A DNA stretch of 64,000 nt, taken from positions 62,001 through 126,000 of the forward strand of contig DF237139.1 of assembly GCA_000708835.1 (NCBI GenBank), given 5' to 3'. Every line of letters begins with the position of its first letter. Within the stretch, counting starts at the first letter, position 1. The notes below the pieces were generated by a model. It had not been told where the DNA came from. It saw only the letters and a list, made by a program, of their open reading frames with translations, and made no database searches. Position numbers and translations under genes: made by a program. This document shows, piece by piece, positions 49,942-52,900 of the stretch. The DNA comes from Klebsormidium nitens. Its lineage: Eukaryota; Plantae; Klebsormidiophyceae.

Positions 49942-52900
49942 CTACTTCTTGTCGTTGTTTTTGGGCTCCTCGTATTCGGCCTCCTTTACTTCCGGCTCTT
50001 GTGCGGCACCCCCGTCTGAGCCGCCGCCGCCACCAGCCTTCTTGGCCAGCTCCGTCCCGATCTTCATGATGGCCTTCTGCAGCTCCTCCACCTTCGACCG
50101 GATGTCGTCCGCGTTTTCGCTGGTCAGGGTGGATCGGAGGGCCTCGATCGCTGACTTGATCTCATCTACGAGCTCCTGCAAGTCGTGCAAAAAGTACTCC
50201 GTCAGAAAGAGAATCTGAAAAGTTTCTGTCCGCATTTTAGCTAGTCAGGGGGGCCGGTGGGCCTCCATCGCTGACTTGGTATCGTCTATGACTCCTGCAA
50301 ACCATGCAGAAGGGGATCTTGTCAGCATACGCAAAAACCTCTGGTGAATTACTCCGTCTGCTTTTTCGCTCGTCAGGGTGCTTCGATCGGTCTCGGTGCC
50401 TGACTTGATCTTGTCTACGACCTGCACATCATGCAAAGGGACATGTCGGAACACCCATAGTCCTCTGGTGAACAAGTCCGTCTGCGTCGCGCTAATCAGG
50501 CGCTTCAGACGGCCTCAATGGCTGACTTCTGTCTCGTCTACAAATCCTGCAAAGTGTGAGAAATAAAAACTGTCAAAGGATAAAAACATTTCCTCAGAAG
50601 AAATTAGCCCGCGCTTTCTTTGGTCAAGGGGCTTCGGACGGCTTCCATCGCGCCCTTGATCTTGGCCCAAAGTTCAGCAAGTTAGGCGAAAGGAAGATCG
50701 TCAAAGCAAGGATTAAGGCCAAGGTTACGCAGAACATCAAAAGTCAAAGATAAAGAAGACCTTGCATTGGGAAGCACCTAACAGAGAATGTCAGGTCAAA
50801 CCCGGAACGATTTCAATGAGACGAGCTGCGCCAGACAGACTTTATACCTGTGCCGAGGAGTCCGGAAAGGTGCAGGCAGCTTGACTTACTCCGGTCATAA
50901 ACCCTCTGGCATGTTAAACATAGGGAGAGGCCAGGGCAGGACGAGGAGCTCGAACCAATCTCGTCACCCAAGCCTTCCAGCTTCGGAGCCAAAAATCACC
51001 CTAAAACCCTAAAACCCTAAAACCCTAAATCTGTCGAGCCCCGTTCTTAAATAATTAGGTTCGGATCCTTCGAAATCATCCATTTTGGGCTGTGAAAAAG
51101 AGGACAAGGACTGGCGCTGTCAGCTCGGCTGTAGTTCACAGCCCCGCGCAAGGCAGACTTTCGCCTGCTTCGGGCCCCCTTACCTGGGAGATGTTTGCTC
51201 CGTGCGTCTCTAGATTCTTCTCGGACGAATACACGAGCCCATCGGCCTCATTCCTGAGATCTATCAGCGCCCGACGCTCCTTATCCTTGTCGGCAAACGA
51301 CTCGGCGTCGCGAACCATCTGCTCAATGTCGGCCTGAGACAGCCCGCCTGAGGAGCGGATGGTAATGTGCTGCAAGCAAACGGTAACGGTTTTGGTGGAC
51401 GGTAACGGTTGGCGGCTCTCACCGTCGAAAGGTTTGCTTTATGCTCGTCGAGCGCGCGCTCGGAGCTGTATACCAGCGAGTCGGCCTCGTTCCTGGCCTC
51501 GGTGACTTTCCGCCGCTCCTGGTCCCGCGCCGCGAATTCCTCGGCATCGGAAACCATACGGTCAATCTCTGCCTGAGTGAGGCCCCCCGAGGACTGGATT
51601 GTGATAGTCTGCAAAACCGCCAGGCCCACTCCCCGACGTTCAGACTACTGTGTGCTTCAAAAAAGGCGACTCCGTAGGCCTGGCTATTTCTGGGCGGTCG
51701 CCCGAGTAGAAAAGAAGACGCAGATTGTTTTCAGCCAGCCGTAAACAATCACTAGAGTAGCAAAATAGCCTTTCAAACTCCCCTCTGCCTATTTGCATTC
51801 CGCCTAAGCAGAAAATTGAGCGGACTGAATTGAGGACGAGTCGAACCGGAAGGGAGAAGAACCGACATTGCTTGAGCAACAAAGACCTGCTTTTCGACCT
51901 GTGTGGCCCAAGAAAAAGTAATCGACTCAGGCCGTTGCACTGTTCAGTTTGATAAGGTTGAATCGAAACGAAGCGTCACGAAGTGAATTTGCAACTTCCT
52001 GATGAAGTCACTTTGCGTTCTACGAAGAACGACCGATTGTTGTCCTGGCAACAGGTAAAGCACGGGCTCACCGGAAAACTTGCTACGACTCACCCGTATG
52101 GATCTGTTTCACATTCGCTCATAGTCGTACGCCTTACAAACATCCTTACAGGTGCGCTGATTTGACGAACGGTGCCCCAAGCGGAACCTTCTCATCCGGG
52201 TAAACCAAGCAGTTTCTAAGTTCTTATGAGTGTGTCAGCGTCTATTTAAAATGGGAGAAGGGGGACAATACGGCTCCAAGACAACGCACCTGCTCCTTGC
52301 CGGTCGTCTTGTCACGGGCGTTTACGTTTACGATACCGTTCTGCAGAAACAGCGGACCAGGTCAGGAGTTAGTCAGAAGCTTCAGCGACGTGGAATGAGG
52401 GGCAAGCAAGAAAACCGTCGGTCGGTCACAAACAGAGCCTTTCAGTGCACGAATCTGATCGTCATCCGAGATCGAACTCGCAAANNNNNNNNNNNNNNNN
52501 NNNNNNNNNNNNNNNNNNNNNNNNNCGTTCGAATGAGATTCTGAAAACCCGATGAAGCAACCTTGCATGGTAATATCAACGAATCCCAGGCGACGCCGAG
52601 ACTTCGGGTCCTGGATCCCAAGCCACATTCACCCAAGACATTCCAACGGCTCAGTTTCCTGTCGAGAACCAGACTATAATCGCTTTAACACGCAACTGAT
52701 AGCTGCTAGGTTTGTGAGACAAGTTTATGAGACAAGGCAGACTATCAACAGTGGCTCCAGAGTCGGGGAGAAAGAAGAATGCCCCTATTTCCGCGGTCAG
52801 CATGCAAGCACCTTCTCAAAACCCTGGGAGACGAAGCGAAGCCGCACACTCACCGCGTCGATGTCGAAGGTGACCTCAATTTGGGGCACGCCACGTGGCG

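What the first reader, a model, noticed from the sequence alone, without database searches (positions are those of the whole stretch)
51184..51608. Candidate mutually exclusive exon pair swapping the lid helices of mitochondrial HSP70
Seen: two adjacent exons, each exactly 186 nt, phase 0/0, with canonical AG/GT sites and no stops or indels. They encode the same segment (end of SBD-beta plus lid helices A/B) at 38/62 identical residues, with mostly conservative changes. Only 53 nt separate them (51370-51422), shorter than the other introns I inferred here (59 and 64 nt minimum), and this spacer has no strong branch-point consensus. Known: steric blocking by a too-short donor-to-branch-point distance is a classic route to mutually exclusive splicing in animals (e.g. 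alpha-tropomyosin exons 2/3), and mutually exclusive exons are considered rare in plants. Inference: both copies are under purifying selection, and the gene makes two chaperone isoforms with different lids. The alternative is one protein with a tandemly doubled lid helix, which would also be unusual.
Basis: partly seen in the sequence, partly recalled or inferred. Interest (0 to 1): 0.85.

Follow-up and report, generated by a model that had tools for sequence, protein, structure and literature searches.

The report
Either-or lid exons in algal mitochondrial Hsp70
A mitochondrial-type Hsp70 chaperone gene of the alga Klebsormidium holds two twin 186-base exons, and each finished RNA keeps only one, so one gene makes two chaperones with different lid helices, an arrangement that related algae have also kept.

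Summary
On the minus strand, exon A (51423-51608) and exon B (51184-51369) are each 186 nt and phase 0/0, with AG/GT flanks. They share 38/62 residues and lie 53 nt apart. They encode Hsp70 strand beta8, lid helix A and most of helix B (DnaK 498-559).

RNA contigs from four public runs show the joints upstream exon->A, upstream exon->B, A->last exon and B->last exon. None shows an A->B joint or a joint skipping both. B is the major form; A reaches roughly 0-39% by contig depth.

Five further related lineages keep both exons intact at 186 nt, with a spacer of only 37-65 nt. One relative's spliced transcript is upstream-A-last. Orthologous dN/dS is 0.07-0.13 for A and 0.06-0.24 for B, and the duplication predates these lineages.

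Exclusion cannot come from frameshift/NMD (186 = 3 x 62) or from U12 introns. The short spacer (steric block) is the best-supported mechanism, but it is inferred.

Earlier notes of this scan report either-or exon pairs in other genes of this genome (Klebsormidium nitens, per those notes). I found no published report for mtHsp70. It is a new member of a known kind.

The parts
52290..52340 (-). Constitutive upstream exon (51 nt, 17 codons, ends ...GKEQ, phase 0). Its 5' splice site is joined either to exon A or to exon B.
   Evidence: Joints 52290->51608 and 52290->51369.
51609..52289 (-). Intron upstream of exon A (681 nt). Its last ~35 nt (about 51609-51645) are conserved across six lineages (TGAACGT...GGCCTGGCGGTTTTGCAG). 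In the relatives they can form a 6-bp hairpin GGCCTG/CAGGCC over A's 3' splice site, which is weaker in the window.
51423..51608 (-). Exon A: 186 nt, 62 codons, phase 0/0. It is the minor isoform exon and the more slowly evolving copy (88-95% protein identity among lineages).
51370..51422 (-). 53-nt GT...AG spacer between A and B. No run shows it spliced out. It carries the conserved 5' end GTGAGAGYC and the conserved element AAYCRTTACCGY just before the AG (likely branch-point region of B).
51184..51369 (-). Exon B: 186 nt, 62 codons, phase 0/0. It is the major isoform exon, present in all four runs and in the two long spliced contigs.
50176..51183 (-). Intron between B and the last exon (1008 nt). 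It holds three to four decayed copies of the 3' splice site plus first ~45-70 nt of the last exon (about 50240-50680), and an interstitial TTTTAGGG run (50999-51029).
49942..50175 (-). Last coding exon (77 codons plus stop; lid helices C-E and acidic tail ...[13 protein letters not shown]), joined to either A or B.
49942..59674 (-). The DnaK/mortalin-type Hsp70 gene as far as I traced it, from the exon encoding ...[11 protein letters not shown] to the stop. The first exon(s) with the presequence were not located. Two assembly gaps lie inside it (52485-52525 and 53435-53990).

Best explanation
This is a tandem-duplicated pair of mutually exclusive exons in a mitochondrial-type (mortalin/Ssc1/DnaK-like) Hsp70 gene of Klebsormidium. 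The 5' splice site of the upstream exon is joined either to the 3' splice site of exon A or to that of exon B, and the chosen exon is then joined to the last exon. Each mRNA therefore encodes one of two full-length chaperones. They differ only in a 62-residue module: strand beta8, lid helix A and about the first four fifths of helix B. That much is shown. B is the major form. The mechanism is inferred. A and B cannot be spliced to each other because only 37-65 nt separate A's donor from B's acceptor, and B's branch point lies inside that spacer, at most about 22-50 nt from the donor. Once A is chosen, B is skipped. The functional meaning is also inferred. The fixed A/B differences cluster at the end of helix A and the N-terminal half of helix B (DnaK 521-534), while the part that latches onto the substrate-binding sandwich is nearly invariant. 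The isoforms would then differ in lid-opening or allosteric kinetics, or in partner contacts, rather than in the peptide pocket itself.
For: Anatomy. Position in Hsp70: (DnaK 499-555, mortalin, Ssc1). The N-terminal exon is closest to mortalin.

RNA: exon contigs have depth 180-780 against about 15 for introns. Joints upstream->B and B->last occur in 4/4 runs, upstream->A in X4 and X16 (10-nt loose end in X19), and A->last in X16. No A->B joint and no skip-both joint appear. Contigs of 1616 and 1624 nt read upstream-B-last.

a spliced contig of a relative reads upstream-A-last.

Conservation: five other lineages keep both exons at exactly 186 nt, with spacers of 55, 65, 65, 65 and 37 nt, while the flanking introns are 371-1008 nt.

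Selection: A versus B dN/dS is 0.22 with dS 1.6. Orthologous A is 0.07-0.13 and B 0.06-0.24.

Tree: the A clade (99/91) and B clade (91/90) have matching inner topology.

There are 13 type-specific columns, 8 of them at exon positions 24-37, and 26 invariant columns including most of 40-50.

NMD is excluded by arithmetic (186 = 3 x 62). All sites are GT-AG of U2 type.
Against: All RNA evidence comes from assembled contigs, which show presence and not absence. A rare A+B or skip-both form could exist. The A->last joint was listed in only one of the four runs laid, plus the relative's transcript. The runs are labelled RNA only by guess, although the ~30-fold exon/intron depth contrast argues for RNA. 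The minimum spliceable intron or donor-to-branch distance in K. nitens is unknown. The 65-nt spacers of three lineages are borderline for a steric block. An earlier follow-up on another pair in this genome (NHX antiporter) did not support a branch-point mechanism. No protein-level evidence exists for either isoform, and mitochondrial targeting was not checked.
Confidence: 0.85

Rival explanations
1. The exons are mutually exclusive, but exclusion and choice are set by competing RNA base-pairing rather than by spacer length. The conserved spacer element CGTTACCG would pair with A's donor region (ACGGTGA) or with B's donor (GGTAAG), or a hairpin would mask A's acceptor.
For: The single-sequence fold puts A's donor in an 8-bp stem with the spacer element. 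RNAalifold pairs the same element with B's donor in all six sequences, and predicts a GGCCTG/CAGGCC hairpin over A's acceptor. These intron pieces are conserved where the rest of the introns is not alignable. Tandem duplication is a known route to such competing structures (PMC6071210).
Against: No compensatory change supports any of these pairs, because the paired columns are invariant. The helices are only 5-8 bp. The region folds no better than shuffles (z = -0.06). The element also looks like an ordinary branch-point region, which would explain its conservation on its own.
Confidence: 0.2
2. Only exon B matters. Exon A inclusion is splicing noise or a decaying relic without a function of its own.
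For: B is the major form in every run, and run X20 has no exon A contig at all.
Against: A is the better conserved copy (88-95% identity, dN/dS 0.07-0.13) across lineages whose synonymous sites are near saturation. It stays intact at 186 nt in six lineages. It reaches about a quarter to two fifths of the summed A+B contig depth in two runs. It is the exon present in the relative's transcript.
Confidence: 0.05
3. Both exons are normally included, giving one protein with a tandemly doubled lid segment.
For: Both-inclusion would keep the frame (186 nt), and the spacer has GT...AG ends.
Against: No contig in four runs joins 51423 to 51369, while contigs joining each exon directly to the flanking exons are abundant. 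The long contigs (1616 and 1624 nt) and the relative's transcript carry one copy only.
Confidence: 0.02
4. The tandem arrangement is an assembly artefact that merges two paralogous Hsp70 genes or alleles.
For: The gene contains two N gaps.
Against: Five independent assemblies of related lineages show the same A-spacer-B order. RNA and pre-mRNA contigs match the window without a single differing letter, and both exons share the same flanking exons.
Confidence: 0.01

Closest known systems
Alpha-tropomyosin exons 2/3 (animals): mutually exclusive exons enforced by a too-short donor-to-branch-point distance
   Same: Two adjacent alternative exons. The intron between them is far shorter than its neighbours. 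The downstream exon's branch point is close to the upstream exon's donor. Exactly one exon appears per mRNA.
   Different: It occurs in a streptophyte alga, not an animal. The two exons here are clear tandem duplicates of equal length. The steric block is inferred from spacer length (37-65 nt) and not tested. Tissue-specific regulators are unknown here.
Tandem-exon-duplication MXE clusters as catalogued for animals (criteria: neighbouring exons, similar length, same phase, sequence homology)
   Same: All the criteria are met, and the pair is conserved across related species, as for many animal clusters.
   Different: Such clusters are regarded as rare in the plant lineage. I found no paper reporting them for Klebsormidium or for any Hsp70.
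Docking/selector competing RNA structures (Dscam, 14-3-3 zeta, ATE1)
   Same: Conserved intronic pieces beside the alternative exons, with complementarity to duplicated sites.
   Different: The helices are short and without covariation. There is no long-range conserved structure, so membership is not established.
Gene-level specialisation of mitochondrial Hsp70 in fungi (Ssc1 versus Ssq1/Ecm10)
   Same: More than one mtHsp70 variant in one organism, which may divide the labour between import, folding and Fe-S cluster work (established knowledge for yeast).
   Different: Here the variants come from one gene through alternative exons and differ only in 62 residues of the lid. No functional division has been shown.
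Other either-or exon pairs noted by this scan in the same genome (DTC carrier, GSH1, OEP80-like, pyruvate kinase, P4H, B3, MUT9-like kinase, histidine kinase, NHX)
   Same: Same genome, same architecture of twin neighbouring exons, with RNA support reported by the other follow-ups.
   Different: A different gene. Here the exon length is a multiple of three, so frameshift/NMD cannot police the choice. I did not re-test those reports.

Membership tests
Mutually exclusive exons arisen by tandem exon duplication | Neighbouring exons on the same strand of one gene, with equal or near-equal length and the same phase | tested here: met
   Both are 186 nt, phase 0/0, 53 nt apart.
Mutually exclusive exons arisen by tandem exon duplication | Sequence homology between the exons | tested here: met
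   38/62 residues identical, BLASTP E = 2e-27. Both align to the same Hsp70 segment.
Mutually exclusive exons arisen by tandem exon duplication | Mature RNAs carry exactly one of the exons: all four outer junctions present, inner junction and skip-both junction absent | tested here: met
   One search shows the four outer joints and no A->B or skip-both joint in four runs. One search shows upstream-A-last in a relative. Caveat: contigs show presence only, so rare forms are not excluded.
Mutually exclusive exons arisen by tandem exon duplication | Both copies maintained by selection in related species | tested here: met
   Six lineages keep both exons. Orthologous dN/dS is 0.06-0.24. A and B form separate clades.
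Steric-hindrance type of mutual exclusion (alpha-tropomyosin 2/3 type) | Distance from the upstream exon's donor to the downstream exon's branch point is below the minimum for spliceosome assembly | tested here: inconclusive
   The spacer is 37-65 nt in six lineages, against 353-1008 nt for all other introns of the gene. The conserved branch-like element leaves at most about 22-50 nt. The branch point is not mapped, and the minimum for K. nitens is unknown.
Steric-hindrance type of mutual exclusion (alpha-tropomyosin 2/3 type) | Lengthening the spacer permits double inclusion | not testable with these tools
   This needs a minigene or genome edit.
Frameshift/NMD-policed mutual exclusion | Including both or neither exon shifts the frame and creates a premature stop | tested here: not met
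   186 nt = 62 codons, so both-inclusion and double skipping stay in frame.
U2/U12 spliceosome incompatibility (JNK type) | One flanking intron has U12-type consensus sites | tested here: not met
   The donors are GTGCGT, GTGAGA and GTAAGG and the acceptors YGCAG. None resembles the U12 donor consensus.
Docking/selector competing RNA structures | Conserved complementary intronic elements whose alternative pairings are supported by covariation or mutagenesis | tested here: inconclusive
   Conserved complementarity of 5-8 bp but no compensatory change. Fold z-score is -0.06.
Mitochondrial Hsp70 (mortalin/Ssc1, DnaK type) | Hsp70 nucleotide-binding and substrate-binding domains, closest to mortalin/Ssc1/DnaK rather than to cytosolic or ER Hsp70 | tested here: met
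   The N-terminal exon is best matched by mortalin (E = 4e-25), then DnaK. Cytosolic and ER forms score far lower. The lid exons match DnaK, Ssc1 and mortalin.
Mitochondrial Hsp70 (mortalin/Ssc1, DnaK type) | No cytosolic EEVD or ER HDEL/KDEL end | tested here: met
   The last exon ends ...[13 protein letters not shown].
Mitochondrial Hsp70 (mortalin/Ssc1, DnaK type) | N-terminal mitochondrial presequence, and exclusion of the plastid DnaK-type paralogue | not tested
   The first exon(s) were not located, and no plastid Hsp70 structure is available for comparison. The mitochondrial rather than plastid assignment rests on the mortalin best hit and on recalled sequence motifs.

The most novel reading that the evidence does not exclude
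Klebsormidium and its relatives have long used in-frame twin exons with an ultra-short spacer as a regular way of making protein isoforms. In this gene, the device splits a single mitochondrial Hsp70 into two chaperones whose lids open or signal differently. They could, for example, serve import versus folding or Fe-S cluster work, or be used under different stresses, which would be an exon-level counterpart of the Ssc1/Ssq1 gene split in fungi.
Probability: 0.25. Interest if true: 0.8.

Novelty: new member of a known kind. Interest (0 to 1): 0.6.

Why it matters
Mutually exclusive exons are regarded as an animal speciality and as rare in the plant lineage. This is a clean, RNA-supported, anciently conserved pair in a streptophyte alga close to the ancestry of land plants, and this scan has noted several others in the same genome.

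Both-inclusion would stay in frame here, so the exclusivity must be made at the splicing step. The spacer varies naturally from 37 to 65 nt between lineages. Together these make the pair a convenient natural system for testing steric exclusion outside animals.

For chaperone biology it is a natural lid swap. Two versions of helix A and the first part of helix B, elements that drive allosteric lid opening (PMC9889847), sit on an otherwise identical mtHsp70, and both have been kept by selection. Comparing them could show which lid residues tune the Hsp70 cycle or partner choice.

Tried and rejected
1. Doubled-lid protein: rejected, because no A->B joint was seen.
2. Misassembly or paralogue merger: rejected, because five independent assemblies show the same order.
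3. NMD policing: rejected by exon length.
4. U12 incompatibility: rejected from the splice-site sequences.
5. Known RNA families or an intronic snoRNA in the gene: none found. Rfam gave no match at E <= 1 over 49000-60500.
6. Global RNA structure over the pair: no better than shuffles. RNAalifold gave only invariant short helices.
7. Looking for predicted proteins with two lid stretches in 1.84 billion representatives: the only two-stretch hits (P0006, P0081) were not close relatives of this gene. P0157 and P0168, found later, are likewise unrelated sequences with repeated segments.
8. Deciding which copy is ancestral: outgroup lids are equally similar to A and B (30.5/62 each). One sequence of unknown origin (P0005) groups with A, but its contig is not on record.
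Searches returned only ORF fragments and other taxa.
10. Intron statistics for K. nitens: the genome paper holds no mention of introns.
11. The intronic contig 50465-50814 seen in the two low-depth runs looked like a possible extra exon. In the deep runs the whole intron is one flat contig, so I take it as chance assembly of pre-mRNA.
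Full report
**Observation.** The gene lies on the minus strand. Two segments, A (51423-51608) and B (51184-51369), are each 186 nt. Each is preceded by ...TGCAG and followed by GT, and each is open over 62 codons. 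They share 38/62 residues (E = 2e-27) and 62% of nucleotides. Third codon positions are near random (26/62 identical). The spacer between them is 53 nt with GT...AG ends. Both translate to the same piece of Hsp70. Both match E. coli DnaK 499-555 and the lid of human mortalin and yeast Ssc1. That piece is the last strand of the beta-sandwich, lid helix A and most of helix B. An N-terminal exon of the same gene is best matched by mortalin (E = 4e-25), then by DnaK, with cytosolic and ER Hsp70s far behind. The C-terminus lacks EEVD or HDEL. I therefore accept 'mitochondrial-type Hsp70', although I did not locate the presequence or formally exclude the plastid DnaK-type paralogue.

**Gene context.** I traced the exons by eye, and with the spliced protein of a relative. 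The other eleven introns are 353-1008 nt long, so the 53-nt spacer is a strong outlier. Two runs of N lie inside the gene (52485-52525 and 53435-53990). The second interrupts a coding exon and hides six codons.

**RNA evidence.** One search found 20 public runs holding this stretch. I laid four of them, from different studies, on 49930-52480. They are assembled contigs, and their label 'RNA' is a guess. Exon contigs, however, have word depths of about 180-780 against about 15 for intron contigs in the two deep runs, and the two shallow runs hold almost only exons. That pattern is what RNA gives.
- Upstream exon (52290) -> B (51369): 4/4 runs.
- B (51183/4) -> last exon (50174/5): 4/4 runs.
- Upstream exon -> A (51608): X4 and X16, plus a 10-nt loose end in X19 that reads into the upstream exon.
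- A (51422/3) -> last exon: X16.
- No contig joins A to B, and none skips both.
- Two long contigs (1616 and 1624 nt) read upstream-B-last.
- Contig depths for A versus B are 182 vs 480 (X4), 362 vs 578 (X16), 8.3 vs 41.3 (X19) and 0 vs 18.6 (X20).

B is therefore the major form, and A a variable minority of roughly 0-39% of the summed A+B depth. Contig depth is a rough measure, and contigs show presence, not absence.

**Relatives.** I searched a profile of A+B against 1.84 billion representative proteins and two word-index searches. These returned ORF fragments that are A-type or B-type exons read into their flanking introns. Fetching their contigs gave five further lineages: L006; L001 and the near-identical L003-L005; L053; and L002.
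- In every lineage both exons are intact and exactly 186 nt, in the order A-spacer-B. They sit between the same upstream and last exons.
- The spacers are 55, 65, 65, 65 and 37 nt, while the flanking introns are 371-924 nt.
- A metagenome-collection contig (L007) of the L001-type lineage is a spliced transcript reading upstream-A-last, with B skipped. This is independent evidence for the A isoform in a second lineage.

**Selection and age.** Within the window, A versus B gives dN/dS 0.22 with dS 1.6, which is saturated. Orthologous comparisons give dN/dS 0.07-0.13 for A and 0.06-0.24 for B. Synonymous divergence runs from 0.26 (L006) to saturation (L002). In a tree with 77 other Hsp70 lid segments, the four A exons form one clade (99/91) and the four B exons another (91/90). 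The two clades have the same inner branching and sit next to each other. The duplication therefore predates these lineages, with no sign of gene conversion since. Outgroup lids are equally similar to A and to B (mean 30.5/62 each), so I cannot say which copy is ancestral. A evolves more slowly than B (88-95% versus 71-82% identity to the window's copy).

**Candidate exclusion mechanisms.**
- Frameshift/NMD policing is impossible. 186 is a multiple of three, so A+B or skip-both mRNAs would be in frame and stable. Their absence from the contigs thus reflects the splicing step.
- All donors and acceptors are ordinary GT-AG U2-type sites, which excludes U2/U12 incompatibility.
- The region folds no better than shuffled sequence (z = -0.06).
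- Alignment of six lineages shows that intron sequence is conserved only in short pieces. These are the last ~35 nt before A (TGAACGT...GGCCTGGCGGTTTTGCAG), the start of the spacer (GTGAGAGYC), and an element AAYCRTTACCGY about 10-15 nt before B's acceptor.
- RNAalifold pairs that spacer element with B's donor. The single-sequence fold pairs it with A's donor. A 6-bp hairpin GGCCTG/CAGGCC can cover A's acceptor in the relatives and is weaker in the window. None of these pairs shows a compensatory change, because the columns are invariant. The spacer element also looks like a normal branch-point region. I keep RNA structure as a minor rival.

**Steric model.** B's acceptor is used with the distant upstream donor, so its branch point must lie just upstream of it, inside the spacer. 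That leaves at most about 38 nt from A's donor in the window, 22 nt in L002 and 50 nt in the 65-nt lineages. In animals and yeast such distances are at or below what a spliceosome can span; this figure is established knowledge recalled by me, not tested here. The spacer has stayed at 37-65 nt in every lineage although its sequence and length changed, while all neighbouring introns are hundreds of bases long. This fits selection for shortness. Grau-Bove et al. 2018 (PMC6142364) noted that exon skipping in Klebsormidium is, unusually, associated with short introns. That is what twin exons with short spacers would produce, which is my inference. There are two cautions. The minimum spliceable intron of K. 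nitens is unknown to me (one search found nothing). An earlier follow-up on another pair in this genome did not support a branch-point mechanism.

**Protein consequence (inference).** Across six lineages, 13 of 62 columns are type-specific, with all A copies differing from all B copies. Eight of these fall at exon positions 24-37, equivalent to DnaK 521-534. That is the end of helix A and the N-terminal half of helix B. Examples are E/[AST], [AV]/[DE], R/K, Q/K, K/A, T/I and E/D. Twenty-six columns are invariant in all copies. They include most of positions 40-50, which align with the DnaK segment that latches the lid onto the beta-sandwich (N537-R547). In DnaK, displacement of helix A is required for docking of the substrate-binding domain onto the ATPase domain, and tethering helix A abolishes allosteric lid opening (PMC9889847). 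The two isoforms are therefore more likely to differ in lid dynamics, allosteric coupling or partner contacts than in the peptide-binding pocket. Nothing here shows which.

**Origin.** The gene is littered with decayed partial copies of exon edges inside its introns.
- Three to four copies of the acceptor plus the first 45-70 nt of the last exon lie at about 50240-50680.
- Copies of the start of the exon that begins at 56114 lie at 56352-56401 and 56501-56550.
- A copy of the start of the exon that begins at 54235 lies at 54528-54586.
- A 96%-identical 75-nt copy of an exon end plus donor lies at 55729-55803.

Local tandem duplication is evidently frequent here, and the A/B pair is the one case in this gene where a whole exon was duplicated and both copies were kept. 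A first-reader note on another Hsp70 gene of this genome describes similar graded copies.

**Comparison and novelty.** The architecture meets every criterion used for tandem-duplication MXE clusters. In mechanism it most resembles the alpha-tropomyosin 2/3 steric type, but that membership is unproven. Full-text searches found no report of mutually exclusive exons in a mitochondrial Hsp70 or in Klebsormidium. The organism name Klebsormidium nitens comes from earlier notes of this scan. Those notes also report RNA-supported either-or exon pairs in at least nine other genes of the same genome, which I did not re-test. This finding is therefore a new member of a known kind and part of what looks like a genome-wide habit of this alga.

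**Limits.** I did not examine raw reads, strand information, conditions, the gene's public annotation or its first exon.

Noticed in passing
window 50240-50680 (minus strand), inside the intron between exon B and the last exon: Three to four decayed tandem copies, at spacings of about 120-250 nt, of the acceptor site plus the first 45-70 nt of the last exon. They are 64-80% identical to the real exon start and carry stops.
   Followed up: partly
window 55729-55803 vs 55886-55960; 56352-56401 and 56501-56550 vs 56063-56112; 54528-54586 vs 54191-54249: More partial exon-edge copies inside other introns of the same gene. They include a 96%-identical 75-nt copy of an exon end with its donor site 157 nt downstream of the real one. 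A first-reader note reports similar graded copies in another Hsp70 gene of this genome.
   Followed up: partly
window 50999-51029: Interstitial run of about four TTTTAGGG units (Chlamydomonas/Klebsormidium-type telomere repeat, by my recollection) inside the intron.
   Followed up: no
window 52485-52525 and 53435-53990: Two runs of N inside the gene. The larger interrupts a coding exon and hides six codons (between ...NRNTTI and QVFSTAADN), so the true sequence or an extra intron there is unknown.
   Followed up: no
window 51609-51645 and the matching parts of L001, L002, L003, L006, L053: The last ~35 nt of the intron before exon A are nearly invariant across lineages whose introns are otherwise unalignable. 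In the relatives they form a GGCCTG/CAGGCC hairpin across A's acceptor. The window's first codon of A (ACT instead of GCC) weakens it.
   Followed up: partly
L007:973-975: The spliced transcript contig of the relative carries an in-frame TAG in the last exon where the genomic contigs L001/L003 have GAG. This is probably a sequencing or assembly error or a variant.
   Followed up: no
window 50465-50814: In the two shallow runs, the only intronic contigs lie here (depth 2-4). In the deep runs the whole intron is one flat contig, so this is probably chance assembly of pre-mRNA rather than an extra exon.
   Followed up: partly
P0005 (origin not on record): A spliced 101-aa Hsp70 fragment from an unidentified organism groups with the A clade (100/84) on 62 columns. 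If real, the duplication, or an A-like lid, may reach beyond the lineages sampled.
   Followed up: partly
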